64,000 bases of DNA, taken from positions 124,001-188,000 of IMG/VR virus record IMGVR_UViG_3300042934_000547; one strand, 5' to 3'. Within the stretch, counting starts at the first letter, position 1, and every line of letters begins with the position of its first letter. The position numbers were made by a program, and so were the translations under genes. Under the pieces are notes generated by a model. The model worked only from the letters and a program-made list of their open reading frames with translations, was not told the DNA's origin and searched no databases. Below, piece by piece: positions 1-56,752 of this stretch.

Positions 1-32
1 ATAATATATACTTGAAATGAGTAAGTTTTACA
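1..32 (-). promoter_or_regulatory. Bipartite early-type promoter TGTAAA-N18-TATATTAT(A), cut by the window edge
   Basis: + strand ATAATATA at 1-8 and TTTACA at 27-32; same 18-nt spacer as five other copies. Confidence 0.75.
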
Positions 33-51
33 CTTTTTAGAAAGAGAAAGG

Positions 52-73
52 GAGTACGATTTAGATCGTACTC
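52..73 (-). terminator. Intrinsic terminator hairpin
   Basis: GAGTACGAT-ttag-ATCGTACTC right after the stop of 74..1255, followed by T-rich sequence on the minus strand. Confidence 0.7.
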
Positions 74-1255
74 TTAATAAACATTCTTAGCATTATTCTG
101 TATAAATAAAGTAAAATACTTTAATGTAGCCTTTATATATTCATTTCTTGTACCTTCTCTACTGGTTTGCCTAAACTTAGCCGAGTTCGTTTCTATTAAA
201 GATATGAGTATCTCTTTAATTCTTATAACAGCATCGTTCTTTGTATTAGACTTAGTAGCTAAAGTATATGATAAGAAATTCAATGATGTACAATCCGGTG
301 TTTTACTATTAGCATAGTAATCCACTACTATGAGAGTCACAAGTTCCTTAATCAATCCATTATTGGATCTATTACTGATAATCCCACTCATTATATTTTT
401 AAATTCATTAGTCTTAATTTTTTCTCCAGAACAGGTCAATATCAAGTTGTAATCCATCCCTATTGAATTTAAACTATTGATTGTTTTTTCAATTAATCTT
501 CCGGCAGCTTTAGTATTACTATCAGATATGTGATAAGAATCAACTTCAAAACTATCACCATCATACGTCATATAAAGCTCATTATCATAAGCATCATAGA
601 ATAATTTAGCTATATTAACAACAAATCCTCCGATACGGGTACGCATCTGTTGTAGGATATATACAATATCATCATCTTGAAAATCCTTGAGCATCTTCTC
701 ATAGGTAGTAAAACACACTAATCCTCTAGATTTAAGTACACCTATAACCGTACCTTCAGTTTTTAAATCATATTTTTCAGTGAGCATTTTATTAACTACA
801 TAATCCATAACGTGTCTATTCTTATTAGGTTCGATTTTGAATGAATTGTAATGGATAGATGGATACATTCTACAAGCTAAGAATATGATGGATAACTCAT
901 AAAGTTTATCATCTTTCTTTTTAAATTTAAAGAATCTAATGATACACATCATTATTAATGACGTTGAATCTGTTATACTCGCTGTTTCCCAATCTTTGTT
1001 CGCATAATAGGTTTCTTTTATTAAACCTGCAATGAATTCATCAGTCAATTCAACTATTGACAATAATTCATCTATTTCTCTACGGGTAAATGGTATTCTA
1101 TCACACGGAGCACTGTCGTATAATGATTCCCTTCGTTCTTGAATATATCTCGATATAAGTTTCTTATATTTATCTATCGTTGAACTAGAAGAAAACTTTT
1201 TCTCTATTAATGGATATAATTTGGTTATAAATACTTTGGATGTATCAACACTCAT
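74..1255 (-). CDS. Hypothetical protein (393 aa, helical), late-type expression
   Basis: Long ORF, AAGGAGG RBS, GACA-N6-TA motif at 1284-1295. Confidence 0.6.
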   Translation of the reverse strand: MSVDTSKVFITKLYPLIEKKFSSSSTIDKYKKLISRYIQERRESLYDSAPCDRIPFTRREIDELLSIVELTDEFIAGLIKETYYANKDWETASITDSTSLIMMCIIRFFKFKKKDDKLYELSIIFLACRMYPSIHYNSFKIEPNKNRHVMDYVVNKMLTEKYDLKTEGTVIGVLKSRGLVCFTTYEKMLKDFQDDDIVYILQQMRTRIGGFVVNIAKLFYDAYDNELYMTYDGDSFEVDSYHISDSNTKAAGRLIEKTINSLNSIGMDYNLILTCSGEKIKTNEFKNIMSGIISNRSNNGLIKELVTLIVVDYYANSKTPDCTSLNFLSYTLATKSNTKNDAVIRIKEILISLIETNSAKFRQTSREGTRNEYIKATLKYFTLFIQNNAKNVY

Positions 1256-1299
1256 TTTATAAATATACCTCCTTCAGTGTAATTATAATTATGTCAAAG

Positions 1300-1383
1300 T
1301 TATTCATCATATTTAGACTGGATATAGTGAATCAGCACTCCAAAAACTGAATAAACGATAGTTATCAAAATCATGTCCATCAC
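1300..1383 (-). CDS. Small membrane peptide (about 27 aa; not in ORF track)
   Basis: GTG/ATG start, MDMILITIVYSVFGVLIHYIQSKYDE, AAGGA RBS, AACC-N6-TA at 1410-1421. Confidence 0.5.
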   Translation of the reverse strand: MMDMILITIVYSVFGVLIHYIQSKYDE

Positions 1384-1449
1384 ATTCAACACTTCCTTAT
1401 TTTGTTATTTATCCAATGGTTGTATAAATTAAGAAAAAATAAAATAGAG

Positions 1450-1650
1450 CTATACAGCTCTATTCATTTTCCTTTCTTTTTCCACTTCCTCTATGTATAT
1501 CAATTCTTCTTCTTGGTTCATTCTATCACGTTCTGTTTCTATTTCAACGAATTCTTTATATTCATCAATACCATCTCTAACTAATTCAATCATTCCTTTT
1601 ACAAAGAAATATGCTGCTATAATGATTGAAATAACAAAAAGTATTTTCAT
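1450..1650 (-). CDS. Small protein with N-terminal TM helix and acidic tail
   Basis: MKILFVISIIIAAYFFVKG; GAGGAGG RBS; abuts the upstream gene. Confidence 0.7.
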   Translation of the reverse strand: MKILFVISIIIAAYFFVKGMIELVRDGIDEYKEFVEIETERDRMNQEEELIYIEEVEKERKMNRAV

Positions 1651-1965
1651 TTATATTCCCTCCTCTTCACAATTAAAAACAAAGTTCACTGAATGAGATT
1701 TAATCAATCCACGGTGTTTACACACTAAATGCACTACGGGTGCATTTATATCTTCTGATGTAATCTCTATCTCATAAAACACCATTGCATATAATCTAAA
1801 CATTGCATCCCCATTTGAACGTTCATGGTCTACAACTAACTTAAGTGCTTCATACAATTCATCGTGTTCATTTTTCATAGCTTTTGTTTGTCTGTACCTT
1901 GAATGAACTCTTAAAAACTTATCCATCTTTTTGCATATTTTGTCTTTTTCTGTAAATATTGTCAT
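1651..1965 (-). CDS. Hypothetical early protein
   Basis: GGAGG RBS; first gene behind the bipartite promoter and pseudoknot leader. Confidence 0.7.
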   Translation of the reverse strand: MTIFTEKDKICKKMDKFLRVHSRYRQTKAMKNEHDELYEALKLVVDHERSNGDAMFRLYAMVFYEIEITSEDINAPVVHLVCKHRGLIKSHSVNFVFNCEEEGI

Positions 1966-1980
1966 TTGTAAATCCTCCGT

Positions 1981-2036
1981 GCCATCTAATGAATGAGATT
2001 GTGATGGACTTTAGATTATTTTATTTTCTCATTCAT
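1981..2036 (-). promoter_or_regulatory. Predicted 5'-leader pseudoknot, copy A
   Basis: Sense strand: S1 ATGAATGAGA/TCTCATTCAT, S2 CCATC/GATGG, AAATAA after the S1 5' strand, GGAGG 3 nt after S2. Confidence 0.7.
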
Positions 2037-2039
2037 ATC

Positions 2040-2072
2040 TATAATATACATTTGAAAATCTTAACTTTTACA
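2040..2072 (-). promoter_or_regulatory. Bipartite early-type promoter TGTAAA-N18-TATATTATA
   Basis: + TATAATATA 2040-2048, TTTACA 2067-2072. Confidence 0.8.
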
Positions 2073-2111
2073 GTAAAAAATAATGAGTGAATTTTTCACT
2101 CATTATTACCT

Positions 2112-2723
2112 TCATTTTGAATTCATTGCCACCCTACTTTTAGCATCAGAGATCATTTCTTTATCAATTGGTATGTATTCGATTTGCTTAATATTCTTAT
2201 TTCTTTCAAAAATAATAATTGGTTGTTCTACCCAATCGGCATCATTGTCATCGATAGTCCCATCATAACCACGTTCTTTAAGTTCTGTAAAATATATACT
2301 TCTATTATAATCAGATGTAACTAAAGATGATATAAAAGATATATATGACTCATTACTTATCTTTTTAGTAGACCTATTCTCCCATTCTCTAAGAAATTTA
2401 TCTGAATCATTTCTATACTTTAATACCGAAATATCTTTAGCTACTTTATTAACATCTGCTTTTTCAACAGAACTGATAAATGCTTCGACACGCTCTTTAT
2501 GATTTGGTATTTTTATATCGTGTATAACCTTCAGTATAACTTTATATCCTCTGTTACCCCATTCGATTAAATATTTATCATTATCTAATGCAAGTTGTGA
2601 AACATACACGTGACGTTCGTTATTTACTTCGTTCTTATTTAAAGTAAGGCGTTGTAACAATGTTCCCTTTTTTAGTATTAGTGAATCGTTATTGAATTTA
2701 ATATTGTAGATCATATTCATCAC
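2112..2723 (-). CDS. Hypothetical protein, possible ADP-ribosyltransferase-like fold
   Basis: Pattern LQR...YVS...GYDG...EQPIIIF; fold guess is weak. Confidence 0.45.
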   Translation of the reverse strand: MMNMIYNIKFNNDSLILKKGTLLQRLTLNKNEVNNERHVYVSQLALDNDKYLIEWGNRGYKVILKVIHDIKIPNHKERVEAFISSVEKADVNKVAKDISVLKYRNDSDKFLREWENRSTKKISNESYISFISSLVTSDYNRSIYFTELKERGYDGTIDDNDADWVEQPIIIFERNKNIKQIEYIPIDKEMISDAKSRVAMNSK

Positions 2724-2777
2724 CTCATTTTTATATTAAACTACAGTTGAAAAAAATAAAGAGAGAATATTCTCTCT

Positions 2778-3176
2778 TTACCATGATGGGCATATACCTT
2801 TACATCCAATGGTTGTATTACCATCATATGTATATACTGCATCAGCTACACAGTACAATTTATCTGAATAACCAAATAAATGTGCATAAGCTTTAGCATA
2901 CATTGCTGATACAATATAGATATCGTATCCTTCAGGAAGTGGATCACAATTTACCACTTCTTTATCGAATACTGGGATACCACCTTGTTCAGTAACTCCA
3001 TTAAAAGTAGTGTTAATGGTAGCATTTAATTTTCCATCAGATGGTAGGCAGGCTACTACTTTGGGCTTTAAATCACGTACAATCATTTTCCTTCTAACGC
3101 CATCATATACTGCATTTTCTATAACAACTACTTTATGTGGCACTCCCACATAAATTTTACCTGTTATTTTGTTCAT
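2778..3176 (-). CDS. Hypothetical early protein
   Basis: GAGGTG RBS; own promoter and terminator (2758-2780). Confidence 0.7.
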   Translation of the reverse strand: MNKITGKIYVGVPHKVVVIENAVYDGVRRKMIVRDLKPKVVACLPSDGKLNATINTTFNGVTEQGGIPVFDKEVVNCDPLPEGYDIYIVSAMYAKAYAHLFGYSDKLYCVADAVYTYDGNTTIGCKGICPSW

Positions 3177-3190
3177 ATATAATCACCTCA

Positions 3191-3248
3191 CCTATTTGTA
3201 TTCTATACAAACGGATTTTAAATAGGATTTCGAATTATTTATCCGTTC
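3191..3248 (-). promoter_or_regulatory. Predicted 5'-leader pseudoknot, copy B
   Basis: S1 AACGGAT/ATCCGTT, S2 CCTAT(TT)/(AA)ATAGG, AAATAA loop, inserted hairpin TTGTA-tagaa-TACAA. Confidence 0.7.
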
Positions 3249-3253
3249 ATAGT

Positions 3254-3286
3254 TATAATATATATTTATAATTCCTAATTTTTACA
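3254..3286 (-). promoter_or_regulatory. Bipartite early-type promoter TGTAAA-N18-TATATTATA
   Basis: + TATAATATA 3254-3262, TTTACA 3281-3286. Confidence 0.8.
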
Positions 3287-3296
3287 AAGAAAAACT

Positions 3297-3318
3297 GGGT
3301 TAGGAATTAACCTAACCC
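3297..3318 (-). terminator. Intrinsic terminator after gyrA
   Basis: GGGTTAGG-aattaa-CCTAACCC followed by a T-run on the minus strand. Confidence 0.8.
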
Positions 3319-5672
3319 ATTATTGTGCAATCAAGTAATATAACACCCTTAGATGGAATCAATTTTGTTCCTTTAGAAATACTACTACCAATTTTTATAG
3401 TATCTATAGGTACGCCAATCTCACACTCAGTCGTTTTATAACCAAATGTCTGACACGGATTTTTATAGGCTAATACTTTGAATATTTCATCACCATCGCC
3501 TAACTTAATAAAATTAGCACCAACATTCGCTCTCTTACCATGTTTGATTGATTCAATGTCCAGTCTATTAACGTAACCTTTTCTAGTCACAATCAATACA
3601 CCTTGAGTATCTGCATCCTTAGATATACTTACTCCTTGCATACCAGTACTATTACCCATAGAACGAACACCTTTTGAATGACGTCTTTGTAATGGTATTT
3701 CAGTAGCATTCATAGCCAATCCTTTTTCCCTATCATATATAAATATGATGTCAGAATCTTTAATGAAATCTACATCAACCAGATAGTCATCATTCTCTAG
3801 ATTAATGGCATACATTCCAGCCTTGGAAACATTCATGAAGTCTTTTACATTAACCTTCTTAATATTACCATTATAGGTAAGAAGTAATATATAATTCTTA
3901 CGAACTTTCTTAGCCAGCTCATTTATTACTGAGTCTGTTGTAACATACATAACTTCCGATGTTAAATTCTTAGATATAAATCTTAAATCAACGCCAGTAG
4001 TATTTGGGTCCATCATAGGCATTGTACTAAGTGGAATACTGAATATACTTCCATTCTTACAGAATAATATAATACTATCTCTATTATCTATAAGGGTGGT
4101 GAACTTCGGTGCATCGTTATTAGCAAATGCTCCTAATCCTAGATTTTGATCTATTTTCTTTATAAAGTTATTTTTGGTAATAACCATTTGCATCATACCA
4201 CCACTAACTGCTACAGTTGCTGGATCAGGTATTACTTTACTTCTTCTAGGTCTACCATATTTAACTTTGAATCCATTGAGTTCATTTTTGATCTCGTCAA
4301 ACAGTAGTTTCTCATTATCTAACTTCATCTTTATATTTTCAATTTGAGATGATAGTTCGATTTGATCCACCTTATACCTATCTAATCTGGTCGGAGATAG
4401 ATATTTGAGAGGTGCATTAATTATAAATAATGCCTGATGTTCAGTTATCTTAATCTCTTTAATCAAGAACTCAACTAATTCTAAATCATCCTGCTTTGTT
4501 CCTTTACGAATCTTTTGGATTATATAATCAATATAACCAGATTCCATTACAGTAATAAACCCAGCTTTCTCATGTCGATTTGTTGATAACATTTGAAGTT
4601 TATTGGTATATAATCTATGCTTAGTCATTAATCTAAAGTCAATCCATTTCAATAAATATCCTTTATAAGAGTATCTATCTAATTTCAATCCATCAAGTAA
4701 CTGCATATTAACTGTGTATGTCATCTGTAAATCCGTATGTTTATATAGGATTTCTCTATTGTATTCTGGGTCAGCACCTTTTTTAAGTTCTAACCATAGA
4801 TCTACGTCACGCTCCCCAGATTGATCCTTATAATCTACAACTTGTAGCTTTTTAGCATCTATGAGACCAACAATTCTTTCTAAGATATTATTTAACGTTC
4901 TCATATCTGGAGTTGATTTAATGACCAAAAACGTTTTTTCTTTCTTGGTATCTCTCACAATTTCAATTTTTCCTCGAACACGAAAACTTCCGTGACCAGT
5001 ATTTGATATTGATTTGAAATTTGATTCTATTATATCAGAACCTAATAATTGGTCTGGAGTCAACACTATTGGTGCTGATGGATCATCTATTAATTTAAGT
5101 GTAGCATTTATAACCTCATTTAGATTATGGGCTGGTATATATACTTGTAATCCATATCCTATACCAAAGTGCCCATTAATCAATAATACCGGAGCTGCTG
5201 ACGCAAATGCTTCCGGTTCTTGATAATCCCTATTATACGTTTCAATATAATCTAAAACATTTTTATTGACATCGACATCTCGTACAAACATGTCGATAGC
5301 AAATTCAGATAACCGCATCTCTGTATATCTTGGAGCGGCTTCTTCATCTCCCTGTGAATTACCCCAGTTACCTTGACCAGTAAATAGTGGATAATTTATA
5401 TTGAAATCAGTCATGGAGTTAACTACCGCACTTTGTAATCCTTGATCACCATGTGGGTGGGATATCTCCATCGTTTTACCTATTACTGATTGAGTCTTAA
5501 TAAACTTCTCTCGTTTCATATGATAAATTAAACTACCAAGTAATCGTCGTACAGATACTTTTAATCCGTCTCTATAGTCTGGAGTAATCCTGTCAAAGTT
5601 AACAGATGTTGTATATATCTCTGCATCACGTTCATATGAATTTAAAAGATTTTGTTCAATTATTTTGTCCAT
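3312..5672 (-). CDS. gyrA: DNA gyrase / type IIA topoisomerase subunit A
   Basis: RDGLK, HPHGD, catalytic AAPRYTE, C-terminal pinwheel-type repeats (QRRHSKG). Confidence 0.95.
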   Translation of the reverse strand: MDKIIEQNLLNSYERDAEIYTTSVNFDRITPDYRDGLKVSVRRLLGSLIYHMKREKFIKTQSVIGKTMEISHPHGDQGLQSAVVNSMTDFNINYPLFTGQGNWGNSQGDEEAAPRYTEMRLSEFAIDMFVRDVDVNKNVLDYIETYNRDYQEPEAFASAAPVLLINGHFGIGYGLQVYIPAHNLNEVINATLKLIDDPSAPIVLTPDQLLGSDIIESNFKSISNTGHGSFRVRGKIEIVRDTKKEKTFLVIKSTPDMRTLNNILERIVGLIDAKKLQVVDYKDQSGERDVDLWLELKKGADPEYNREILYKHTDLQMTYTVNMQLLDGLKLDRYSYKGYLLKWIDFRLMTKHRLYTNKLQMLSTNRHEKAGFITVMESGYIDYIIQKIRKGTKQDDLELVEFLIKEIKITEHQALFIINAPLKYLSPTRLDRYKVDQIELSSQIENIKMKLDNEKLLFDEIKNELNGFKVKYGRPRRSKVIPDPATVAVSGGMMQMVITKNNFIKKIDQNLGLGAFANNDAPKFTTLIDNRDSIILFCKNGSIFSIPLSTMPMMDPNTTGVDLRFISKNLTSEVMYVTTDSVINELAKKVRKNYILLLTYNGNIKKVNVKDFMNVSKAGMYAINLENDDYLVDVDFIKDSDIIFIYDREKGLAMNATEIPLQRRHSKGVRSMGNSTGMQGVSISKDADTQGVLIVTRKGYVNRLDIESIKHGKRANVGANFIKLGDGDEIFKVLAYKNPCQTFGYKTTECEIGVPIDTIKIGSSISKGTKLIPSKGVILLDCTIMG

Positions 5673-8990: not shown

Positions 8991-9035
8991 TTTGTTATTT
9001 CCTCCTAAAATTTTATTTGGTTTTTATTTCACATT

Positions 9036-9044
9036 TATAATATA
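9036..9044 (-). promoter_or_regulatory. Early-type promoter TATATTATA
   Basis: Motif about 45 nt upstream of start 8990. Confidence 0.7.
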
Positions 9045-9059
9045 TATTTATAAAGTGTT

Positions 9060-10908: not shown

Positions 10909-10953
10909 GTATCCGTCCTCCTTCATCATTATAATATATATTTATTATAACTT

Positions 10954-13106: not shown

Positions 13107-13184
13107 CCCAGTACCTCCTTTCTTATTCATATCTATAATATATATTTCAAACATTTTTACATTAATATAAAGAGGTGATTAAAT

Positions 13185-28607: not shown

Positions 28608-30107
28608 CTATGCATTTACTTTATTATAGAATTCAATTAATGAACGTTTGTATTCTGGATCATATTTATCTCTACCCAAATTGATAAAGTTGTTTAAGTT
28701 AACTAATGTATTCTTTGTTGGTAGGTAGTTAACGTATAACAATCCATCATTTCTGTTTATAATCATAGCTCTTCTTGGATTATAAACTAATAATGCTGTT
28801 TGATAGAACTTGTCGTTGATTATCAACTTAACGTTTAATACGTCACCGTCAAAGTCTGCTTGTAGTGATGGCAATATATCAAGTGGAACACCCATTGTGA
28901 AATTATAGCATATTCCAATAACATGCATTTGAATCATACTACCATATTCCAATGTAGGATTTCTGTTTATCATTACTGGAATTCCAAATGGGTATGAGTT
29001 GATAATACTATTAATGATACTTATCAATTCATAATTCTCTTTAAGTCTTCCAACACTCCATATCATGTAAGCATCATTAATACTGATACTTCTTCTATGT
29101 GCAATTATATTTATAATTTTCTGTTGCAACAAATCACACAATGTATAATATGATAGAGTTATTTGGTCAACCTTAAGTGAAGCATCTGGTTTGATAACAT
29201 TTCTTGCTGTAAAGTTATATTTACCACCATATGCTCTCCTTATCAATCCAGTTTTACCTGACAAAATTTCTTCAATATCTGCATATACGTTCATGAACTC
29301 ATCTTGAAGTTTTTGAAGATATTCAGGTATTGATGTTTTATATAGAGTTAATTTATTCCTGTTTATTCTAGCTGTATACATAGCCATATTATTAAAATTA
29401 CCATTGATATCATAATATTCTAATTGTATACCAGAGGTTTTTAATAATCTTAATAATGTAGTATAAACAGGTATACAGCTTGTAAATATTAAGTCTCTAT
29501 TCTTTATGATTTCTTCATATGCATCCTGTTTACTTTGGGTATTAGCCATTTTCTTATAAAATGTAATTATTTCATCGAATCGATTGATGAATTCATATAT
29601 CCCGATTCTAAAGAATGGTTCTTTATCTGGATCTGGAGTCTCTACCGGAATCTCAATTCCATCTGAGTTAAAGTTTTCATCTAGATTCATCATATTATTA
29701 AATGCTTTTTGACCAATAAAACTTTGTATAGTCTTATACATTATTGGATGAATTACTTTATATCCATGCTGTATTACCAACCATCCCGTATAAGCAAAAT
29801 TATCGTCAACAAATTTAACTTTAGTTTTACATTTCGGGCACAGTATTCCTTCATTACTACGTGAACGTAAATTACCACATTCACATTTGTGTCGATCGCC
29901 ATTTGGACTAATATCATCAACACCTCTACCATATCGACTAGAGAATATTCCATCTGGGTCTTTTAATGCTTTTTTGATACCTTGGGCACCAGTAATTATA
30001 AATCCGTTGTCTGTTTCTAAGTCTCGTTTACATTCTTCTTCAAAATTGATTTTTACCAATCTAGATTGGTATTCAATTTCGTTACTATGTCCGTAATCAT
30101 TATACAT
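28608..30107 (-). CDS. Phage multisubunit RNA polymerase beta-prime, N-terminal catalytic fragment (probably non-virion RNAP)
   Basis: GIFS, Zn finger CECG..CPKC, GKTGLIR, NRNPTL, ADFDGD catalytic loop; TATATTATA at 30188-30196. Confidence 0.92.
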   Translation of the reverse strand: MYNDYGHSNEIEYQSRLVKINFEEECKRDLETDNGFIITGAQGIKKALKDPDGIFSSRYGRGVDDISPNGDRHKCECGNLRSRSNEGILCPKCKTKVKFVDDNFAYTGWLVIQHGYKVIHPIMYKTIQSFIGQKAFNNMMNLDENFNSDGIEIPVETPDPDKEPFFRIGIYEFINRFDEIITFYKKMANTQSKQDAYEEIIKNRDLIFTSCIPVYTTLLRLLKTSGIQLEYYDINGNFNNMAMYTARINRNKLTLYKTSIPEYLQKLQDEFMNVYADIEEILSGKTGLIRRAYGGKYNFTARNVIKPDASLKVDQITLSYYTLCDLLQQKIINIIAHRRSISINDAYMIWSVGRLKENYELISIINSIINSYPFGIPVMINRNPTLEYGSMIQMHVIGICYNFTMGVPLDILPSLQADFDGDVLNVKLIINDKFYQTALLVYNPRRAMIINRNDGLLYVNYLPTKNTLVNLNNFINLGRDKYDPEYKRSLIEFYNKVNA

Positions 30108-30187
30108 CTTGTCTCTTCTCCCTATATTTATATTTTTAAGTCTCTTTACCTTAACATATAGTTTTTACTCTTTTAATTTTCTATTAT

Positions 30188-30217
30188 TATAATATATATT
30201 TGTAAAACAAATTATTA
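30188..30217. promoter_or_regulatory. Divergent early-type (minus) and late-type (plus) promoters
   Basis: TATAATATA 30188-30196; AACA-aattat-TA 30206-30217. Confidence 0.65.
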
Positions 30218-36408: not shown

Positions 36409-36858
36409 CTATTTACGTATTTTACACCATAATACAATTACATAAATGATTGAAACTAAAACTACACAAACCGTAAATATCACCGAAAACATACCATACA
36501 ATACCAATGGTTCTAAACCACTACCAACAATAAGTTCCGATGTTAATTGGTATTGTGCACTTGCCATTGCAACACATGTTGATACAAAGCCAAGTACCAC
36601 AGAAATCCACATCATTGCATTAATCTTAGATGCTGCATATCTGTATTTAATATTGTTAGATTCTTTATCTGAATAAGTATTAACTGTCTTACAATTTTCT
36701 TTTTGGGTCAACGATGGTAATTCTATATTACCTGTTGATTCTGATAGTAACTCATTTATTCCATTTAGCATACTATCATAAGCAGCTCTTAAACTGTTAT
36801 AGTCTTCCACTGATACATATTTTTGTACTTTAACGTTTTCTTGTTCAACTGAACTCAT
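36409..36858 (-). CDS. Early two-TM membrane protein
   Basis: Two C-terminal TM helices; GGAGG RBS; behind a pseudoknot leader. Confidence 0.7.
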   Translation of the reverse strand: MSSVEQENVKVQKYVSVEDYNSLRAAYDSMLNGINELLSESTGNIELPSLTQKENCKTVNTYSDKESNNIKYRYAASKINAMMWISVVLGFVSTCVAMASAQYQLTSELIVGSGLEPLVLYGMFSVIFTVCVVLVSIIYVIVLWCKIRK

Positions 36859-36878: not shown

Positions 36879-36957
36879 CTCACTTCTTTATAGAAGAATA
36901 GTTACGTGAGTTATATATCCAACCAAGGATATATTTCGATTATATTATTTACTATTC
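36879..36957 (-). promoter_or_regulatory. Predicted 5'-leader pseudoknot, copy C
   Basis: S1 GAATAGT/ACTATTC, S2 CTCAC/GTGAG, AAATAA loop, two inserted hairpins. Confidence 0.75.
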
Positions 36958-36962
36958 AATTC

Positions 36963-36995
36963 TATAATATATATTTAAAAATACTAATTTTTACA
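36963..36995 (-). promoter_or_regulatory. Bipartite early-type promoter TGTAAA-N18-TATATTATA
   Basis: + TATAATATA 36963-36971, TTTACA 36990-36995. Confidence 0.8.
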
Positions 36996-43560: not shown

Positions 43561-43658
43561 TTGTTGTCCTCCTTCAATATTATTACTATAATATATACTT
43601 ATTCACTATATTAAATAGTTTTTCAAATATTAATATTAAAATTTCTGGCATAGAAAAA

Positions 43659-43684
43659 TGGGATAACTAATTAAAGTTATCCCA
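43659..43684 (-). terminator. Intrinsic terminator
   Basis: TGGGATAACT-aattaa-AGTTATCCCA. Confidence 0.8.
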
Positions 43685-43694: not shown

Positions 43695-44042
43695 TTATAT
43701 ACAAAAATAAGATAATGCTTCCTTAACTTCATCCGGTAAATTTGGCGGATAAGAGAAAAACATTCTATCTTTATTTACTACTATACCTAAATTTGGTTTA
43801 TATTCGGGCAACCCGAATAACCAGCTTCCTAATGTATTTACAGATACTTCATTACTGTCGTATTGTATCACAATTGGTTCATCAGTTTCAATTTTGGCGA
43901 AATAGATTTTGTTAAACTTTTTCTTAAAAACCTTTCTAATGTTCACCATTGTTTTTACATAGTTATCCTTAACAAACTCTGGTTTAATTTCTTTTCTGGA
44001 AGTTTGTTTAGATAAACCCCTCAAACAAATACTCTCTGTCAT
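43695..44042 (-). CDS. Hypothetical protein
   Basis: Overlaps the RNase H stop. Confidence 0.6.
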   Translation of the reverse strand: MTESICLRGLSKQTSRKEIKPEFVKDNYVKTMVNIRKVFKKKFNKIYFAKIETDEPIVIQYDSNEVSVNTLGSWLFGLPEYKPNLGIVVNKDRMFFSYPPNLPDEVKEALSYFCI

Positions 44043-44713
44043 ATATAACGCTCCTTACTAATCAATTTAATATAGTTTTCGACGATTTCCTTTTTCATGC
44101 TGTTATGAGAATCTGTTCTATCAGAACTATACTTATTATTCATATTGTCCTCGATAAGCAGATTTCTGGTAATTTTATCTATTTTATCGTTAAAATAAGA
44201 AATCTCTTTAATAAAATTAATATCTGTTATGTTTTGTTTATTTGATTTGTTGAATACATTTCTAGCATTCTCTAATGATGAATCACTCTGCTTCACATGA
44301 CCTTTTTGATGGTAAAATCTTAAATCTAAACCACTATCTAGTATTAATTTCATACAGTATATAAGTTTTTCTTGATTTTTAACAATCCCATTACCACCAT
44401 AGAAGTTTCCATCTTTAAATCTCCAATTATGTACCCATTCTCTCAAGCTATTTATACAAATTAATGAATCAGAAAAAATATTAAATTTGGTAGTACCATA
44501 CGTATTATGAAAGTTTTTTGCTATTTTGATACCCAAAATTATTCCTTCTAGTTCCCCTCTGTTATTTGTTGTGTCTGAAATCACTTTGCCAAAAGCATTA
44601 GTGTATTCTTTTGATTTTATAATAGCTCCTGCACATGAATATGTAGTACCCTTATATATTCTCACTGAGGCGTCGGTAAAAATATTTACCCTGTTTTCGT
44701 AATCTAATTTCAT
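44039..44713 (-). CDS. rnhA: Ribonuclease HI
   Basis: FTDAS, TNNRGEL, FSDS, KGH, NDKID; TATATTATA at 44744-44752. Confidence 0.9.
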   Translation of the reverse strand: MKLDYENRVNIFTDASVRIYKGTTYSCAGAIIKSKEYTNAFGKVISDTTNNRGELEGIILGIKIAKNFHNTYGTTKFNIFSDSLICINSLREWVHNWRFKDGNFYGGNGIVKNQEKLIYCMKLILDSGLDLRFYHQKGHVKQSDSSLENARNVFNKSNKQNITDINFIKEISYFNDKIDKITRNLLIEDNMNNKYSSDRTDSHNSMKKEIVENYIKLISKERYI

Positions 44714-44767
44714 TTTGTTGTCCTCCTAAAATATTATCGAATATATAATATATACTTCTAATATGTT

Positions 44768-46385: not shown

Positions 46386-47207
46386 TTAATGATTATGGTT
46401 ACATCCACACGATTGTTCACCAGTATGAACATGACCGCAATTACAGTCACGAGGTTCTCTAGTCTGAATTTGTGGATTTCTTATAATCGGACTACCTCCA
46501 ATAATGTAATTAATATATGTGGTTGTAAATAACAAAGTTGGATGATCATTACCACCCACAGTCAAAGTCATTTTTGTCATAAGATCATTTTCATCAAATT
46601 CATATTGGATATGTTTAGCCCCTGTAACAGATTCTTCCAGCACTTGACCTAAATCATTATCACGATATATCATGTGCGAAAGTTCATTACCATCTTCACC
46701 GATAACTATTTCACTCTTTTTGTTTGGTGAATTTGGATAAAACTCGCCTGTTACCTTAAACCCATCAATTTCAAATGAATATTTATCACCATCGATTTTA
46801 ATATCATATAACGTTTCAATCAAAGCTTCTTTATTTTCTGAATCTTGAGAATCTACCGAATGTTTAATCATTCTTATTGGTCTTTCTAATTCATTGAATT
46901 CAGTATCCATATAATTTAAATAAAGACTACCACTTCTAGTTGTTTCAGTAAATTTGCTTTTTGTAAGTTTGTTATTTTCGTCATAAAAATTTTCTGTTAT
47001 AGAACTCGGTTCAATTTTTCTAATTATTTTATCAGTATCTTGTAAATAACTAATTGTTTTTTGATTACCTACATAAATAGACGTTTCATCATTAATACGA
47101 ACAATTCTTCCGAGTTCATCAGTAAACATCAATGCGTGAAAGCATTCTCCTTCGTTTACAACCTTTCTTGTCACTAATATCTTTTTATTTGCTAAATTTT
47201 CATTCAT
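46386..47207 (-). CDS. Stand-alone YD-repeat-like early protein with His/Cys-rich tail
   Basis: TDELGRIVR, FYDENNKL, YEFDENDL; tail CNCGHVH...CGCNHNH; start moved to MNEN. Confidence 0.7.
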   Translation of the reverse strand: MNENLANKKILVTRKVVNEGECFHALMFTDELGRIVRINDETSIYVGNQKTISYLQDTDKIIRKIEPSSITENFYDENNKLTKSKFTETTRSGSLYLNYMDTEFNELERPIRMIKHSVDSQDSENKEALIETLYDIKIDGDKYSFEIDGFKVTGEFYPNSPNKKSEIVIGEDGNELSHMIYRDNDLGQVLEESVTGAKHIQYEFDENDLMTKMTLTVGGNDHPTLLFTTTYINYIIGGSPIIRNPQIQTREPRDCNCGHVHTGEQSCGCNHNH

Positions 47208-47225: not shown

Positions 47226-47273
47226 CCTCATTTTAGGATAAGATATGAGGTCTTACACATTATTTTCTTATCC
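47226..47273 (-). promoter_or_regulatory. Predicted 5'-leader pseudoknot, copy D
   Basis: S1 GGATAAGA/TCTTATCC, S2 CCTCAT/ATGAGG, AAATAA loop. Confidence 0.75.
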
Positions 47274-47278
47274 ATATC

Positions 47279-47311
47279 TATAATATACATTTGAAATAAG
47301 TTATATTTACA
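47279..47311 (-). promoter_or_regulatory. Bipartite early-type promoter TGTAAA-N18-TATATTATA
   Basis: + TATAATATA 47279-47287, TTTACA 47306-47311. Confidence 0.8.
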
Positions 47312-47340: not shown

Positions 47341-48030
47341 TTAATTAAAAATTCGGTTATAAAATGTAGTGGTGGTTTCTTCTGTATTATTATCTTTATG
47401 AGACACTTTCTTAGTTAATAATCCATTTTCGTCATATGTATATTTAGTTAACTTTCCATATTGACATGTTGAGTACCATTGATTTAATGGATTATCAATG
47501 TAAAAATTATGTATAACAACAGTATCTGTTTTTATTACCGTTGCTTTATATTCTTTCTTACGTGAAGAATTTGGGAAATAAGTAAAGTCCAATTTTCTGC
47601 CATTTATGATAAAAGTGTATGTATCATTAACTATAGTAGCATCCATGATTGTTTTTTCCTTTTTGGGATCTATATCACCAAAAATAGAATCAGTACTACC
47701 CTTAGTGATCTGTATTATTCTCCCTAACTCATCATATGAAAATATCCATATAAAAAGGTTTACACCATCTACGTCTTTTGTATACTCCCTACCTACTTCC
47801 AATTTACCGTTTTCATCATAGACATATTCGCCACACATTGTAGAACTTATTTTAATGATTTTGTCAGTATCATTGAAGTATTCGATATTTTCTGACGATC
47901 TCGTATACTTCTTTTCCCTCCTTACAATTCTACCGAGTCTATCGGTAAACATCAGTGAATGAAATTGTTCCTCACCATTATTCTTTCTCTTTGTTACCAA
48001 AATTACTTTCTTTTCCAAATTTTTGTTCAT
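47341..48030 (-). CDS. Stand-alone YD-repeat early protein (paralog of 46386..47207)
   Basis: FHSLMFTDRLGRIVR, YVYDENGKL, YDELGRI, YTYDENGLL; TATATTATA at 48087-48095. Confidence 0.75.
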   Translation of the reverse strand: MNKNLEKKVILVTKRKNNGEEQFHSLMFTDRLGRIVRREKKYTRSSENIEYFNDTDKIIKISSTMCGEYVYDENGKLEVGREYTKDVDGVNLFIWIFSYDELGRIIQITKGSTDSIFGDIDPKKEKTIMDATIVNDTYTFIINGRKLDFTYFPNSSRKKEYKATVIKTDTVVIHNFYIDNPLNQWYSTCQYGKLTKYTYDENGLLTKKVSHKDNNTEETTTTFYNRIFN

Positions 48031-48125
48031 CTTGTTTATTCTCCTTTTTAGGTTTTTAAATAAAAATCTATGTTTTTATTCATATCTATAATATATACTT
48101 GAAAAAATAACTAGAGAAAAAAGAA

Positions 48126-48149
48126 GGAGGATGAAATTAATCATCCTCC
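48126..48149 (-). terminator. Intrinsic terminator after dut
   Basis: GGAGGATGA-aattaa-TCATCCTCC. Confidence 0.8.
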
Positions 48150-50062: not shown

Positions 50063-50896
50063 CTAAACGTATAATATCTGTTTTATGTAATTGCTGGATT
50101 TAATCTCAATTAATTGATTGTTTCTGGTATAATATAATTTATATGAGTCCTTAAATACCGTTTTATCGTCTTCGATTATTTCTGTAAATATTCTATCACC
50201 TTTATCATTAAATTCAGTAAAAGTAATATCAGTTATGCGTTTATTTTGTTCATTCTTATATTGCATAAATTCTTTATTTGTAGCTTCCTTACCATTTTCA
50301 TGATATGTGTATTCAGTAACATGAATTTTATCTGCATCATTATCATATGTATGAGTTATAGATTTAATCTGGTTCTCATCATTGTAATAATAATCAGTAA
50401 CAATACCATTTTTGTGATTTATGTATCGTGTCAAATCATTTCTGATATTATAATAGTATGATGATAATATTCTACCATTCTCATCACATATCTCACTTAT
50501 CATATCACTGTTTTCAAAATACTTCATTATCACAATATTATCATCTGAAACTAATTCTGATAATAATCCACTTCCATTATATTTATATAATGTGATTTTA
50601 GGTACACCAGTTTTGATATCAAAATCAAATGTACTAATTATCTTACCAGACAAATCATATTCTGACTTAGATAATACAACTCCATTAGTATTATACTTAG
50701 TTTCAATAATTCTAGTATTACTATGAGTAAAAACTGTTCTAAGTTCTTTAATAAGTTTACCCTTAGTATTAACCTCTTTCTCATATAGAGATTGACCTGA
50801 GTCATTAAACATCTCAAGTCCAATTTTAGAAATCTTACCTTCTCCATCATTAAATTTAGTTGTAACTATCTTAGTTACCTTATTTGAATTCATCAT
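50063..50896 (-). CDS. Stand-alone YD-repeat early protein
   Basis: EYDLSGKI, YKYNGSGLL, YYYNDENQI, YTYHENGK; TATATTATA at 50963-50971. Confidence 0.75.
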   Translation of the reverse strand: MMNSNKVTKIVTTKFNDGEGKISKIGLEMFNDSGQSLYEKEVNTKGKLIKELRTVFTHSNTRIIETKYNTNGVVLSKSEYDLSGKIISTFDFDIKTGVPKITLYKYNGSGLLSELVSDDNIVIMKYFENSDMISEICDENGRILSSYYYNIRNDLTRYINHKNGIVTDYYYNDENQIKSITHTYDNDADKIHVTEYTYHENGKEATNKEFMQYKNEQNKRITDITFTEFNDKGDRIFTEIIEDDKTVFKDSYKLYYTRNNQLIEIKSSNYIKQILYV

Positions 50897-51018
50897 TCGA
50901 ATTCCCCCTGTTATTAAGATTATTAATTCTATCCTATATTAGATTAGAATCAATTTCATAAATATAATATATACTTATAAGTGTTTTTATGGAATTGAAA
51001 TGATTAAGTGATTTAATT

Positions 51019-53175: not shown

Positions 53176-53243
53176 TTGTATCCTCCTTATATAACCTTTT
53201 AACTTATCGTTTATATAATATATACCCATATCAAATTTTGAAA

Positions 53244-53314
53244 ATAAAAGGGAGGAGTGAAATTAATCACTCCCAACAAGATGATTTTTATTACTTTACT
53301 TATAACCGAGACTT
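53244..53314 (-). ncRNA. Candidate small RNA (about 70 nt)
   Basis: AACT-N6-TA at 53314-53325, terminator 53254-53273, no minus-strand ORF. Confidence 0.3.
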
Positions 53315-53530: not shown

Positions 53531-53644
53531 TTAATTATTATTACGTTGAATTGGTATAATATTATGAGTAAATTTGAATAGTAATTGTTCAGACTCTTCC
53601 ACCATCAATGCCTCTAGTATGAATTTCTTTTCATTAATTGTCAT
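53531..53644 (-). CDS. Small protein (37 aa; not in ORF track)
   Basis: MTINEKKFILEALMVEESEQLLFKFTHNIIPIQRNNN; starts just downstream of the preceding stop; AAGGA RBS. Confidence 0.5.
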   Translation of the reverse strand: MTINEKKFILEALMVEESEQLLFKFTHNIIPIQRNNN

Positions 53645-53647
53645 AGT

Positions 53648-54496: not shown

Positions 54497-54654
54497 ATTG
54501 TAAGTCTCCCTTCTAATGCCTATTAATTAAATTATCTTTATGTTTGTTTTTTCGTTAAATATTCTACAGTTACATAAATCAATATCTCCGTGAAATTTAT
54601 TATTTTATACCATTGCAACATTATAATAGTTGTGGAAGACTAAAGGAGAATATG

Positions 54655-55464
54655 ATGATGGAAAATAAAATAGATGTACAAGGATATAAGTATTATTCAA
54701 TAGAAGATAATATTATTAGAATCTCTAAAGATAAAAATGTTATTAATGATAAGTGGACTAAACTGAAAATGGATGCATTAATGGCTTTTCATATAATATC
54801 GAATGATGATGGAGCCAAATATATTATGGTTGCTATGTACAATAATGGTGACTATAAAAATCCTGTTCTGATATTTGTTTCAAATTTTATAAATGAATGG
54901 GACGCAAATATTGGTAATAGAATACTAGGGAAAACATTCAACAGGTATACTGGAATTGATGAAAATTTATTTAAGGTTATAAAAATAGAATATTCCGAAT
55001 ATGTTGCTATATATAAGGAAGATTCATTTAAAAATATTTATGACCAACTTATTAATAAAGATAAGTTTAATGAAGTCCTTAAAGCATTTAATTCTGCTTT
55101 TATAGAAATGGGTAATCTTAATATATCTCTACCTGATAATCTTTATGATTATATGAAACACGGTGCATTTGATTATGACTACGATAATGAATTAGGCATT
55201 GAGCAACTTGAATTTGACCTTGAAATAGATAATGAGAGACTAATCAACCAATTAGACTTAGAAACATTTCTCGGTCATAAATTAATTCAACCTGTTATAG
55301 TCAAATATAATCGAATTATAGTTTTAGAAGATATCAAAAAAGACTATGGATTATTCCGTGACGCCACTGATACATTATATCTAGTTACGTTTATTCGTGG
55401 AGATATAATAGATGATGAAAACCTAGATTTAATCGAGTGGAATAAGAGCTTTGGAGTGAGGTAA
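54655..55464 (+). CDS. Hypothetical protein
   Basis: AAGGAG RBS; AACA-N6-TA at 54617-54628. Confidence 0.65.
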   Translation: MMENKIDVQGYKYYSIEDNIIRISKDKNVINDKWTKLKMDALMAFHIISNDDGAKYIMVAMYNNGDYKNPVLIFVSNFINEWDANIGNRILGKTFNRYTGIDENLFKVIKIEYSEYVAIYKEDSFKNIYDQLINKDKFNEVLKAFNSAFIEMGNLNISLPDNLYDYMKHGAFDYDYDNELGIEQLEFDLEIDNERLINQLDLETFLGHKLIQPVIVKYNRIIVLEDIKKDYGLFRDATDTLYLVTFIRGDIIDDENLDLIEWNKSFGVR

Positions 55465-55535
55465 TAAAATATATTATAAATATATATTATAACAATGAAT
55501 TAAACAAATTTAAAATTTTAGGAGGAACAACAAAG

Positions 55536-56255
55536 ATGGATATGGATAATACATTCATGAACCCAAACCAAGTGAATCAAAAGGAAATAAAGGATTACGA
55601 AGCAGAATTCGATACTCCAATTACATTAAGTGAGCCGATGAGATTTTATATCGAGACCACTACACGTTTAGGTATGGAGATATTAAAGAAGTATACTCCA
55701 ATTTTCGGCGACTTAATCGGTACGTTTATTACGGTTAATACCAAAGGCGATCTTGAAGTATCATTACAGTTTGAGAAAAAAGGTGCTGGCAATGTTGTAG
55801 ACTTATTCAACAACAGTGACTTCAACCAAAGAATTACAGCGTTCAATACGCTTAACACAACAAACAGAATCTTCGATTTAGATGATACTGTTAAAGGAAC
55901 TTTCCAAAGATTCTTAATCAAAGCTAATCCAATGCAGAAAATTGATTGGAATCAATATATCAGACAAATAACAATCAACAACAACACTATGAGTGGAAAG
56001 CACACAATTCTTGAATTGGCTCACATTTCACTTGATAGATTGCTGCCTGAATTAATATTTGTTGGAGAAGATGCTAAGAAAAAACGCACTACTCAGATTA
56101 AGACTATTATAACTGGTTCTGTAAATCCAGCTTCACCATTATCAAAAAATTGGTTCGTGAAGATAGATATGCTGGATCAAGCTACTGTTGATTTCGTATC
56201 TAAAGAAGCAGGAATTGTTACAAGCACTTACGGCTTGGATATGATAACACTCTAA
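55536..56255 (+). CDS. Early hypothetical protein
   Basis: TATATTATA at 55483-55491; strong RBS. Confidence 0.7.
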   Translation: MDMDNTFMNPNQVNQKEIKDYEAEFDTPITLSEPMRFYIETTTRLGMEILKKYTPIFGDLIGTFITVNTKGDLEVSLQFEKKGAGNVVDLFNNSDFNQRITAFNTLNTTNRIFDLDDTVKGTFQRFLIKANPMQKIDWNQYIRQITINNNTMSGKHTILELAHISLDRLLPELIFVGEDAKKKRTTQIKTIITGSVNPASPLSKNWFVKIDMLDQATVDFVSKEAGIVTSTYGLDMITL

Positions 56256-56313
56256 TATAGCAGAGGGTATACATTATGTATACCCTTTAATTTTTCTCTA
56301 TGGAGGTACACTA

Positions 56314-56643
56314 ATGGCTTTCGAAGACAAACTCGAATATGACATAGAACAAGAATTAGGTGTATTTGATGAAAAAGGAAATACATCACTTGAATTAAGA
56401 GTTGTAAGCTGGAATAAGAAGCCTGCTAAACTTGAATTAAGAAAATGGGTAACCAACAGCGATGGTCAAAATCCAAATAAAGGATTCTCATTCTTAACTG
56501 ATGAAGGTCCGCATCGTCTTGCTGAACTTTTAGTTGAAAATAATTTTGGAGATACAAAAACTCTAAAAGCTCTTTTAATTGATAGGGATGATTACGATGA
56601 ATCTGAATCAGATTATGACTATTTGGATGAAGAAGAAGAATAA
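56314..56643 (+). CDS. PC4/YdbC-family ssDNA-binding protein
   Basis: LELRVVSWN..PAKLELRKW...KGFSF; acidic tail. Confidence 0.8.
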   Translation: MAFEDKLEYDIEQELGVFDEKGNTSLELRVVSWNKKPAKLELRKWVTNSDGQNPNKGFSFLTDEGPHRLAELLVENNFGDTKTLKALLIDRDDYDESESDYDYLDEEEE

Positions 56644-56649
56644 CAATTA

Positions 56650-56679
56650 ATGGTGGAACCTGTAATCGGGTTCCATCAT
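56650..56679 (+). terminator. Intrinsic terminator
   Basis: ATGGTGGAACC...GGTTCCATCAT followed by a T-run. Confidence 0.8.
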
Positions 56680-56719
56680 TTTTTTTTGTATTATGACAAT
56701 ATTCGCATCAAGATAAGAA

Positions 56720-56752
56720 TGTAAAAATTAACTTTTTTGAATATATATTATA
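56720..56752 (+). promoter_or_regulatory. Bipartite early-type promoter TGTAAA-N18-TATATTATA
   Basis: TGTAAA 56720-56725, TATATTATA 56744-56752. Confidence 0.8.

What the first reader, a model, noticed from the sequence alone, without database searches (positions are those of the whole stretch)
1..56752. Bipartite early promoter TGTAAA-N18-TATATTATA
Seen: six promoters (1-32, 2040-2072, 3254-3286, 36963-36995, 47279-47311, 56720-56752) carry a perfect TGTAAA exactly 18 nt upstream of TATATTATA. Others (9036, 10930, 13134, 30188, 43587, 44744, 48087, 50963, 53214, 55483) have only the core. Established: phiKZ-group early promoters read by the virion RNAP have a TATATTA-type core. Inference: the fixed-spacing upstream hexamer defines a sub-tier (immediate-early or factor-dependent), implying a -35-like reader in or alongside the virion RNAP.
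Basis: partly seen in the sequence, partly recalled or inferred. Interest (0 to 1): 0.7.

Follow-up and report, generated by a model that had tools for sequence, protein, structure and literature searches.

The report
Upstream box on phage early promoters
A giant phage related to Bacillus phage AR9 has two kinds of early promoter, and the kind with an extra TGTAAAA box at a fixed distance upstream matches, in two studied relatives, the genes switched on first or most strongly, which gives a handle on how the sigma-less injected phage RNA polymerase finds its promoters.

Summary
Six carry TGTAAA 18 nt before TATATTATA; ten do not. Genome-wide there are 42 such promoters. Seventeen have the box (11 exact, 6 with one mismatch), always at N18 and never at N17 or N19. 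The classes are discrete: 0-2 mismatches or 4-7. By homology with AR9's mapped start sites the box lies at -38..-32 (extended form TGTAAAAnTT).

A YGTA box sits at the same place (G at -37 or -36) in a subset of early promoters of AR9, BpSp, phiR1-37 and two IMG/VR phages, and in nearly all phiKZ early promoters. The papers I read do not describe it as a separate element.

Published AR9 data link it to timing. All eight "pre-early" genes lie behind box promoters, and the 5/20-min ratio is 1.16 against 0.21 (p=3e-5). In phiR1-37, box promoters are stronger and never late-rising (0/11 against 9/15).

The best reading is an optional upstream element read by the injected polymerase complex. It marks the strongest and earliest promoters.

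The parts
1..32 (-). Class A early promoter, cut by the window edge. The TGTAAAA box is at 32-26 and the core TATATTAT at 8-1. The last core base and the predicted start (genome 123994) lie outside the window.
2034..2072 (-). Class A early promoter. Box 2072-2066, core 2048-2040, predicted +1 G at 2034. It drives a 104-aa ORFan (1651-1965).
   Evidence: A ~93%-identical relative keeps 1960-2083 with only 1-2 changes.
3248..3286 (-). Class A early promoter. Box 3286-3280, core 3262-3254, predicted +1 at 3248. It drives a 132-aa ORFan (2778-3176).
   Evidence: The relative has +1 and -1 indels inside the spacer that keep its length.
36957..36995 (-). Class A early promoter. Box 36995-36989, core 36971-36963, predicted +1 at 36957. 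It drives a 149-aa hydrophobic ORFan (36409-36858).
47273..47311 (-). Class A early promoter. Box 47311-47305 (TGTAAAT), core 47287-47279, predicted +1 at 47273. It drives a 273-aa protein (46386-47207).
56720..56758 (+). Class A early promoter. Box 56720-56726, core 56744-56752, predicted +1 at 56758. It drives tiny hydrophobic ORFs (56856-56990, 57069-57254).
9030..9052 (-). Class B early promoter (core only), predicted +1 at 9030
10924..10946 (-). Class B early promoter, predicted +1 at 10924
13128..13150 (-). Class B early promoter, predicted +1 at 13128. A TGTAAAA lies upstream at the wrong spacing (N14).
30182..30204 (-). Class B early promoter in front of the RNA polymerase beta'-like gene 28608-30107 (probable non-virion polymerase subunit). 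There is no G at the expected +1.
43581..43603 (-). Weak class B promoter candidate (score 13.5, no G at the expected +1)
44738..44760 (-). Class B early promoter in front of an RNase H gene (44039-44713)
48081..48103 (-). Class B early promoter with the best core score in the genome, predicted +1 at 48081
50957..50979 (-). Class B early promoter, predicted +1 at 50957
53208..53230 (-). Class B early promoter, predicted +1 at 53208
55475..55497 (+). Class B early promoter, predicted +1 at 55497

Best explanation
The 16 sites are early promoters of the kind read by the injected (virion) multisubunit RNA polymerase of AR9/phiKZ-like jumbo phages. They have a core (A)AATATATATTATA at about -19..-6 and a start at a G six bases after TATATTAT.

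Six of them (17 of 42 in the genome) carry a second, optional element, TGTAAAA(nTT), at -38..-29. It is held exactly 18 nt from the core.

I propose that this box is an upstream promoter element contacted together with the core by one rigid complex. That complex would be the virion polymerase itself or a protein injected with it. The box would raise the affinity or firing rate of those promoters, so that their genes (mostly small lineage-specific ORFans, some of them tiny membrane proteins) are expressed first and most strongly. This would be a hard-wired 'pre-early' regulon.

Shown here:
- the box, its spacing and the two discrete classes;
- its conservation in place across seven phages;
- its association with early-weighted and strong expression in AR9 and phiR1-37.

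Inferred:
- the start sites in this phage;
- that the box acts in this phage as its counterparts appear to act in the relatives;
- that it works by direct contact with the injected polymerase complex.
For: (1) Core and geometry match AR9's experimentally mapped early consensus AAATATATATTAT-(6N)-G+1 (PMC5312081). The phage has two sets of split beta/beta' genes, and the early set lies behind class B promoters.

(2) The spacing is rigid: 11 exact and 18 near matches at N18 against 0-3 at any other spacing. The mismatch distribution is bimodal.

(3) Cassette duplication does not explain the box. Within class A the box is 86% identical pairwise. The upstream flank is 31% and the spacer 48%, the same as in class B.

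(4) TGTAAAA is not enriched genome-wide, and I found no clear stand-alone sites. The intergenic copies outside class A promoters are six in a tandem repeat and five scattered single ones, none examined further.

(5) Using the stricter YGTA test (14 of 42 promoters here, against 17 by the hexamer rule), a YGTA tetramer peaks at one single offset in all seven genomes:
- G at -37: this phage 14/42, IMG/VR G001 18/32, AR9 8/34, BpSp 8/33;
- G at -36: G002 9/35, phiR1-37 16/55, phiKZ 8/28 strict, with RTAYTYAAA in nearly all;
- elsewhere 0.1-0.4 per offset; P between 1e-10 and 1e-31.

(6) AR9:
- 10 of 38 promoter-proximal genes have the box;
- their 5/20-min FPKM ratio is 1.16 against 0.21 (p=3e-5);
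- the first gene peaks at 5 min in 6/10 against 0/28;
- 5-min FPKM is 304 against 85 (p=0.025);
- all eight genes the authors called 'pre-early' sit in six operons headed by box promoters.

(7) phiR1-37:
- early read count median is 10,285 against 885 (p=0.015);
- the early/late ratio is 1.16 against 0.38 (p=0.02);
- the LATE or MIDDLE pattern occurs in 0/11 against 9/15 (p=0.0024).

(8) Class A promoters here also have better cores (PWM 32.0 against 26.7, p=0.003).

(9) In ~93%-identical relatives the promoter and leader at 1960-2083 differ by 1-2 letters, against about 7% elsewhere. Paralogous class A copies align up to, and stop at, the outer edge of the box. A 676-bp indel ends 2 nt upstream of the box.
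Against: - No transcript data exist for this phage. Start sites and timing are transferred from relatives that share about 29% protein identity in a polymerase subunit.
- The relatives' boxes differ in sequence (CCGTATTAA, CGTA) and, in some, in register by one base.
- The expression tests use only the first gene after each promoter and small samples. In phiR1-37 only 15 of about 39 box-less promoters were tested.
- The AR9 pattern (no further rise after 5 min, decline by 40 min) would also fit early shut-off at the box.
- In this phage, unlike AR9, class A goes with long structured leaders (median about 105 nt against about 40 nt from core to start codon). RNA-level effects could therefore confound any expression difference.
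- Some class A promoters are paralogous, so they are fewer than 17 independent cases.
- No protein that reads the box has been identified.
Confidence: 0.6

Rival explanations
1. The box is an operator for a phage regulator made early, such as a repressor or shut-off factor. This regulator would switch off a first wave of early promoters. The box would then not help the polymerase bind.
For: In AR9, transcripts behind box promoters stop rising after 5 min and fall by 40 min (40/20 ratio 0.83 against 1.95). In phiR1-37, box genes are flat or falling. A fixed distance to the core would also suit a repressor that occludes the polymerase.
Against: - Box promoters are already higher at the first time point in AR9 (304 against 85 FPKM).
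- They drive the most abundant transcripts of phiR1-37 throughout infection.
- The box is asymmetric, unlike typical dimeric operators.
- It is almost constitutive in phiKZ and in G001, where it cannot define a special regulon.
- I found no clear stand-alone copies that look like regulatory sites.
Confidence: 0.15
2. The shared box is a by-product of recent duplication of promoter-leader cassettes and has no function of its own.
For: Class A leaders fall into sub-families (genome 160971/180744/110539, 171287/196944, 101161/113135/124008). Two of the downstream genes are paralogues.
Against: - Flank and spacer identities within class A are at background level, while the box is 86% identical.
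- The same position carries a box in six other phages with unrelated downstream genes.
- The box correlates with expression in two of them.
Confidence: 0.05
3. TGTAAA is a -35 hexamer, and class A promoters are also read by the host sigma-A polymerase (dual promoters).
For: The position is roughly -35-like. The core contains TATAAT-like hexamers. The host is probably a Firmicute, judging from the GGAGG ribosome sites.
Against: - TGTAAA matches TTGACA at only 3 of 6 positions.
- The base before TG is not conserved, so there is no TTG.
- The 18-19 nt spacer is off the optimum.
- The relatives' boxes (CCGTATTAA) look nothing like -35.
- AR9 and phiKZ development is known to be independent of host polymerase (PMC5312081, PMC7598289).
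Confidence: 0.03
4. The box belongs to a second, tandem promoter for the non-virion (late) polymerase, which would make these genes continuously expressed.
For: In AR9, continuously expressed genes have tandem early and late promoters.
Against: - Neither TGTAAAA nor CCGTATTAA fits AR9's late consensus AACA-(6N)-TA/G.
- Independent promoters would not need an exact 18-nt spacing.
- AR9 box genes fall late in infection rather than continuing to rise.
Confidence: 0.03

Closest known systems
AR9 early (virion RNA polymerase) promoters, AAATATATATTAT-(6N)-G+1 (Lavysh et al. 2017, PMC5312081)
   Same: The core sequence, the distance to a G start, the number per genome (41 against 42) and the intergenic position in front of early operons, including non-virion polymerase subunits, all match. 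A subset also has an upstream box at the same distance.
   Different: The published description stops at the 13-nt AT-rich core. The paper never mentions the upstream box. AR9's box reads ACCGTATTAA and here it reads TGTAAAAnTT. AR9 box promoters have short leaders and here they have long structured ones.
[quoted passage not shown]
   Same: The core is TATATTAC with a start 6 nt downstream. An upstream block (RTAYTYAAA) begins at -36, the same place as the box here.
   Different: In phiKZ the upstream block is present in nearly every early promoter, so it does not split them into classes. Here it is all-or-none in 40% of promoters.
Bacterial -35 hexamer and proximal UP element
   Same: It is an optional or variable upstream contact about 25 bp from the centre of the melting element. 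It is asymmetric, depends on spacing and is associated with stronger promoters.
   Different: No sigma or alpha subunit is known in these phage polymerases. The box lies 3-5 bp further upstream than -35. Its spacing tolerance appears to be zero rather than 17 +/- 1. It has no sequence likeness to TTGACA.
Phage T4 middle promoters (MotA box at -30 plus a -10 element)
   Same: An upstream box at a fixed distance from a shared -10-like element defines a temporal class within one phage.
   Different: T4 uses the host polymerase with the phage-made factors MotA and AsiA, and the class is delayed. Here the class is, by analogy with AR9, the earliest, so it probably needs nothing made after injection.

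Membership tests
AR9/phiKZ-type virion-polymerase early promoter | Conserved AT-rich core (A)AATATATATTAT centred near -10 | tested here: met
   42 sites were found by PWM and 35 have exact TATATATTATA-N5-G. The information profile matches that of AR9.
AR9/phiKZ-type virion-polymerase early promoter | Transcription starts at a G 6 nt after TATATTAT | tested here: inconclusive
   A G is at that position in 38 of 42 sites. Hairpins beginning exactly at that G are seen here and in G002. No 5'-end data exist for this phage.
AR9/phiKZ-type virion-polymerase early promoter | Intergenic, oriented toward early-type genes, including non-virion polymerase subunits | tested here: met
   All 39 strong sites are intergenic with a same-strand gene downstream. 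The beta-like gene at genome 114480-115394 and the beta'-like gene at window 28608-30107 lie behind such promoters.
AR9/phiKZ-type virion-polymerase early promoter | The phage encodes two sets of split beta/beta' subunits (virion and non-virion) | tested here: met
   There are two Rpb2_6 matches and a beta' fragment. The phrog_2987 hit and tblastn hits go to AR9, BpSp and phiR1-37 polymerase genes. The full subunit inventory was not worked out.
AR9/phiKZ-type virion-polymerase early promoter | Activity independent of host polymerase and of new protein synthesis | not testable with these tools
   This needs rifampicin or chloramphenicol infection experiments. It has been shown for AR9 and phiKZ only.
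Sigma-70/sigma-A promoter (-35 TTGACA, 17 +/- 1, -10 TATAAT) | TTG-containing -35 hexamer at 16-18 nt from a -10 hexamer | tested here: not met
   The box consensus is a.TGTAAAAaTt, with no conserved T before TG. It matches TTGACA at 3 of 6 positions. The relatives' boxes are CCGTATTAA.
T4-type activator-box (MotA-like) middle promoter | The box is read by a phage activator made after infection, and the class is delayed | tested here: not met
   In AR9, box genes are relatively the earliest. No direct test was made in this phage, and no search for MotA or AsiA homologues was made.

The most novel reading that the evidence does not exclude
The YGTA/TGTAAAA box is the docking site of a so far unidentified promoter-specificity module of the sigma-less virion RNA polymerase, either a subunit domain or a co-injected protein. 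It would be a second, modular DNA-reading head. Its specificity would have drifted between lineages (TGTAAAA, CCGTATTAA, CGTA, GTATTCAAA) while the core reader stayed fixed. Its optional use would hard-wire a pre-early host-takeover regulon across the whole phiKZ/AR9 group.
Probability: 0.35. Interest if true: 0.75.

Novelty: new variant of a known kind. Interest (0 to 1): 0.62.

Why it matters
How the injected, sigma-less multisubunit polymerases of phiKZ-like jumbo phages recognise promoters is unresolved. Reviews describe their promoters as a single ~10-nt AT-rich motif near -10 (PMC7598289).

This work shows a second element that is strictly spaced and conserved in position across Gram-positive and Gram-negative members of the group. 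It is optional in most of them.

The box also offers an explanation for an observation left open in the AR9 paper. [quoted passage not shown]

It gives concrete templates for biochemistry and structure work: promoters with and without the box, spacer variants, and box swaps between lineages. It gives a sequence rule for picking out candidate first-wave (host-takeover) genes in uncultured jumbo phages. It also suggests a way to grade strength in phage-polymerase expression systems.

Tried and rejected
- **Near-identical DNA search in the phage collection:** no match. tblastn of a 919-aa ORF also found none.
- **Protein-seeded search of IMG/VR with the beta' fragment:** no relatives found. The promoter pattern itself found related jumbo phages instead.
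- **RNA-seq for this phage:** none was listed, so timing could not be tested directly.
- **Fetching the ~93% relatives seen in runs X2 and X3 as contigs:** this failed. They exist only as pieces of 1.5 kb or less, and the protein search found nothing above 47% identity.
- **Rfam on the window:** nothing.
- **Palindrome idea:** the region -22..+3 reads TTCA-N17-TGAA, but the arms do not co-vary beyond what the consensus gives (2.52 against 2.42 +/- 0.07 pairs). I therefore did not pursue a hairpin-promoter model of the N4 type.
- **Link between box and upstream terminator:** rejected. Several class A promoters have no upstream hairpin or T-run, and class B promoters also follow terminators.
- **Conservation of first genes as a class marker:** only a weak trend (1/16 against 5/25 here, p=0.38; 1/8 against 12/25 in BpSp).
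- **Other readings:** the host sigma-A, tandem late promoter and pure duplication readings were considered and set aside (see rivals).
- **Full phiR1-37 test on all 55 promoters:** Eleven box promoters and 15 box-less ones were used.


Full report
**What the window is.** The window is bases 124001-188000 of a 231,975-bp virus record. The record has 30.8% G+C, direct terminal repeats and an estimated 100% completeness. It was found whole in a soil metagenome run. It has no near-DNA match among deposited phages.

A beta'-like polymerase fragment (window 28608-30107) is about 29% identical to those of Bacillus phages AR9, PBS1 and BpSp and of Yersinia phage phiR1-37. The genome has two beta-like genes and split beta' pieces. 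It is therefore a distant member of the AR9/phiKZ group, the jumbo phages that carry one multisubunit RNA polymerase in the virion and make a second one after infection.

**Check of the observation.** The pattern TGTAAA-N18-TATATTATA occurs five times in the window, against none in 100 shuffles. The sixth site (1-32) lacks only its last base at the window edge and is complete in the genome.

A weight matrix built on the oriented core separates 39 strong sites genome-wide, and three weaker ones were added. All 39 are intergenic and point at a same-strand gene. Sixteen of the 42 lie in the window.

Counting TGTAAA at every spacing from 5 to 40 nt from the core gives 11 exact and 18 near matches at N18. 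Any other spacing gives 0-3. Mismatches to TGTAAAA at that position are bimodal: 17 promoters have 0-2, none has 3, and 25 have 4-7, as expected by chance. There are thus two discrete classes, A (17) and B (25). The box is in fact TGTAAAAnTT.

**What the sites are.** AR9's early promoters were mapped by dRNA-seq and primer extension. They read AAATATATATTAT-(6N)-G+1, and their use does not need protein synthesis, so they are assigned to the injected polymerase (PMC5312081).

The sites here have the same core and a G at the same distance. By homology the core lies at -14..-6 and the box at -38..-32. Class B promoters head the beta and beta' genes that must encode the non-virion enzyme, as in AR9.

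**Is the box more than shared ancestry of copies?** Within class A the box is 86% identical pairwise. The upstream flank is 31% identical and the spacer 48%, no different from class B.

TGTAAAA is not enriched in the genome as a whole. Nine of its 19 intergenic copies are in class A promoters. Six more lie in an unrelated tandem repeat, and the rest are scattered single copies. I therefore found no clear sign that the box acts on its own.

Runs X2 and X3 hold a relative about 93% identical. In it:
- the promoter and leader at 1960-2083 differ by only 1-2 letters;
- paralogous class A promoters align up to the outer edge of the box and stop there, while class B copies stop about 9 nt upstream of the core;
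- a 676-bp indel ends two bases upstream of the box;
- at 3254-3286 an insertion and a deletion inside the spacer keep its length.

**The same box position in relatives.** Scanning IMG/VR for the pattern led to two more jumbo phages that use the same core (G001, 231 kb, 25% G+C; G002, 257 kb, 35% G+C). I also fetched AR9, BpSp, phiR1-37 and phiKZ whole.

In each genome the early promoters were collected in the same way, and the tetramer YGTA was counted at every offset. In all seven genomes it peaks at one offset only:
- G at -37 in this phage (14/42), G001 (18/32), AR9 (8/34) and BpSp (8/33);
- G at -36 in G002 (9/35), phiR1-37 (16/55) and phiKZ (8/28);
- 0.1-0.4 at other offsets, with P from 1e-10 to 1e-31.

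The local consensus differs by lineage: TGTAAAA(G) here and in G001, ACCGTATTAA in AR9, CCGTATyrAA in BpSp, CCGTATTT in G002, CGTA in phiR1-37 and TTGTATTyAAA in phiKZ. In phiKZ and G001 nearly all promoters have a recognisable form of it. In the others it is all-or-none in a fifth to two fifths of promoters.

**What the literature says.** The AR9 paper gives only the 13-nt core and contains neither the box sequence nor the term 'upstream element'. A 2020 review describes these promoters as ~10-nt AT-rich motifs centred near -10. A Staphylococcus jumbo-phage study reports the same core alone. [quoted passage not shown] I found no description of a discrete, optional upstream box or of its link to timing.

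**Link to expression in AR9.** From the authors' Table S2, ten of the 38 genes with an early promoter have the box 14 nt before TATATATTAT: g047, g048, g069, g108, g120, g169, g190, g234, g253 and g292.

From their Table S4:

| Measure (first gene) | Box | No box | P |
|---|---|---|---|
| 5-min/20-min FPKM ratio, median | 1.16 | 0.21 | 3e-5 |
| First gene peaks at 5 min | 6/10 | 0/28 | 8e-5 |
| 5-min FPKM, median | 304 | 85 | 0.025 |
| 40-min/20-min ratio, median | 0.83 | 1.95 | 0.004 |

With only exact CCGTAT sites (n=7) the first test still gives p=2e-4.

The authors singled out eight genes (g048, g109, g111, g120, g169, g235, g289, g292) as a possible 'pre-early' group and left the reason open. 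All eight lie in six operons headed by box promoters.

**Replication in phiR1-37.** I mapped 13 box promoters and 16 box-less promoters to their first genes and read those genes' rows in that paper's Table S2. Three genes with almost no reads were dropped.

| Measure (first gene) | Box (n=11) | No box (n=15) | P |
|---|---|---|---|
| Authors' pattern LATE or MIDDLE | 0/11 | 9/15 | 0.0024 |
| Early/late read ratio, median | 1.16 | 0.38 | 0.02 |
| Early read count, median | 10,285 | 885 | 0.015 |

Several of the most abundant transcripts among the genes sampled (g304, g144, g326) are behind box promoters. The box-less sample was chosen by core score, blind to expression, but it is incomplete.

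**Features of class A in this phage.**
- Class A promoters have better cores (PWM median 32.0 against 26.7, p=0.003).
- They have longer leaders (core to start codon mostly 71-114 nt against about 40 nt, p=0.0009).
- Their first genes are smaller (median 140 against 235 aa, p=0.03) and have no family matches. Some are tiny hydrophobic peptides. This echoes the small membrane proteins among AR9's pre-early genes.

**Mechanism.** The exact spacing, the asymmetry of the box, its dependence on the core, its near-constitutive presence in two lineages and its association with strong, front-loaded expression fit best with an upstream promoter contact made by the same complex that reads the core. That complex would be the injected polymerase or something injected with it.

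A box that serves as an operator for early shut-off is the main rival. It would explain the plateau after 5 min. It does not explain the higher first-time-point levels, or the sustained very high expression in phiR1-37.

The host sigma-A, tandem late promoter and pure duplication readings are each contradicted by specific results.

Still unproven: the start sites and timing in this phage, the causal role of the box, and the identity of its reader.

**Verdict.** The feature is a new variant of a known promoter type. It is not described as such in the papers I could search, and it is directly testable in AR9.

Noticed in passing
window 3296-3319, 43659-43684, 48126-48149, 53254-53273 (and 13 more in the genome): These are terminator-like hairpins with a fixed TTAATT hexaloop, 5-10-bp stems and a T-rich tail. 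There are 17 in the genome, against 2-6 for other loops of the same composition. Nine sit directly upstream of early promoters of either class.
   Followed up: partly
leaders downstream of window 2034, 3248, 36957, 47273, 56758; also genome 73287, 101161, 113135, 117314, 172095: Long early leaders begin with a stem whose 5' arm starts at the predicted +1. The complement lies 25-60 nt downstream. Compensatory changes occur between promoters (GAATAGT/ACTATTC, GAATGAGA/TCTCATTC, AACGGAT/ATCCGTT, GGATAAGA/TCTTATCC). In IMG/VR phage G002, short hairpins starting exactly at +1 are common. They are possibly 5'-end protection. There is no Rfam match.
   Followed up: partly
window 2075-2750: A 676-bp segment holding a 203-aa ORFan (2112-2723) is absent from the ~93%-identical relatives in runs X2 and X3. 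The joint lies 2 nt upstream of the promoter box. The ORFan has no Pfam match.
   Followed up: partly
all early promoters, e.g. window 48081-48103: The region -22..+3 is a near palindrome (TTCA-N17-TGAA, on average 8 of 12 pairs). The arms do not co-vary beyond the consensus.
   Followed up: yes
genome 68366-69743 (outside the window): At least six copies of a ~153-bp tandem unit lie in an apparently non-coding stretch. Each contains TGTAAAA.
   Followed up: no
window 46386-47207, 47341-48030, 50063-50896: These are neighbouring early genes. The first two are paralogues by their N-termini, and the last two have weak RHS-repeat matches. The first is behind a class A promoter and the other two behind class B promoters.
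   Followed up: no
window 56856-56990, 57069-57254, 57247-57393: A run of tiny hydrophobic ORFs (44, 61 and 48 aa) is the first thing transcribed from the class A promoter at 56720-56758.
   Followed up: no
window 13128-13165: This class B promoter has a TGTAAAA at the wrong spacing (N14). It may be a chance match or a decayed box.
   Followed up: no
IMG/VR phage G002 (loci L049-L061), 226208 and 226636: G002 uses two different upstream boxes: CCGTATTT (G at -36) in about ten promoters, and TGTAAAA (G at -37) in two adjacent promoters.
   Followed up: no
run X3 ('organism A'): A relative about 93% identical to this soil-metagenome phage is present at about 2000x depth in a run labelled with an organism name. 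A cultured host-phage pair may therefore exist.
   Followed up: no
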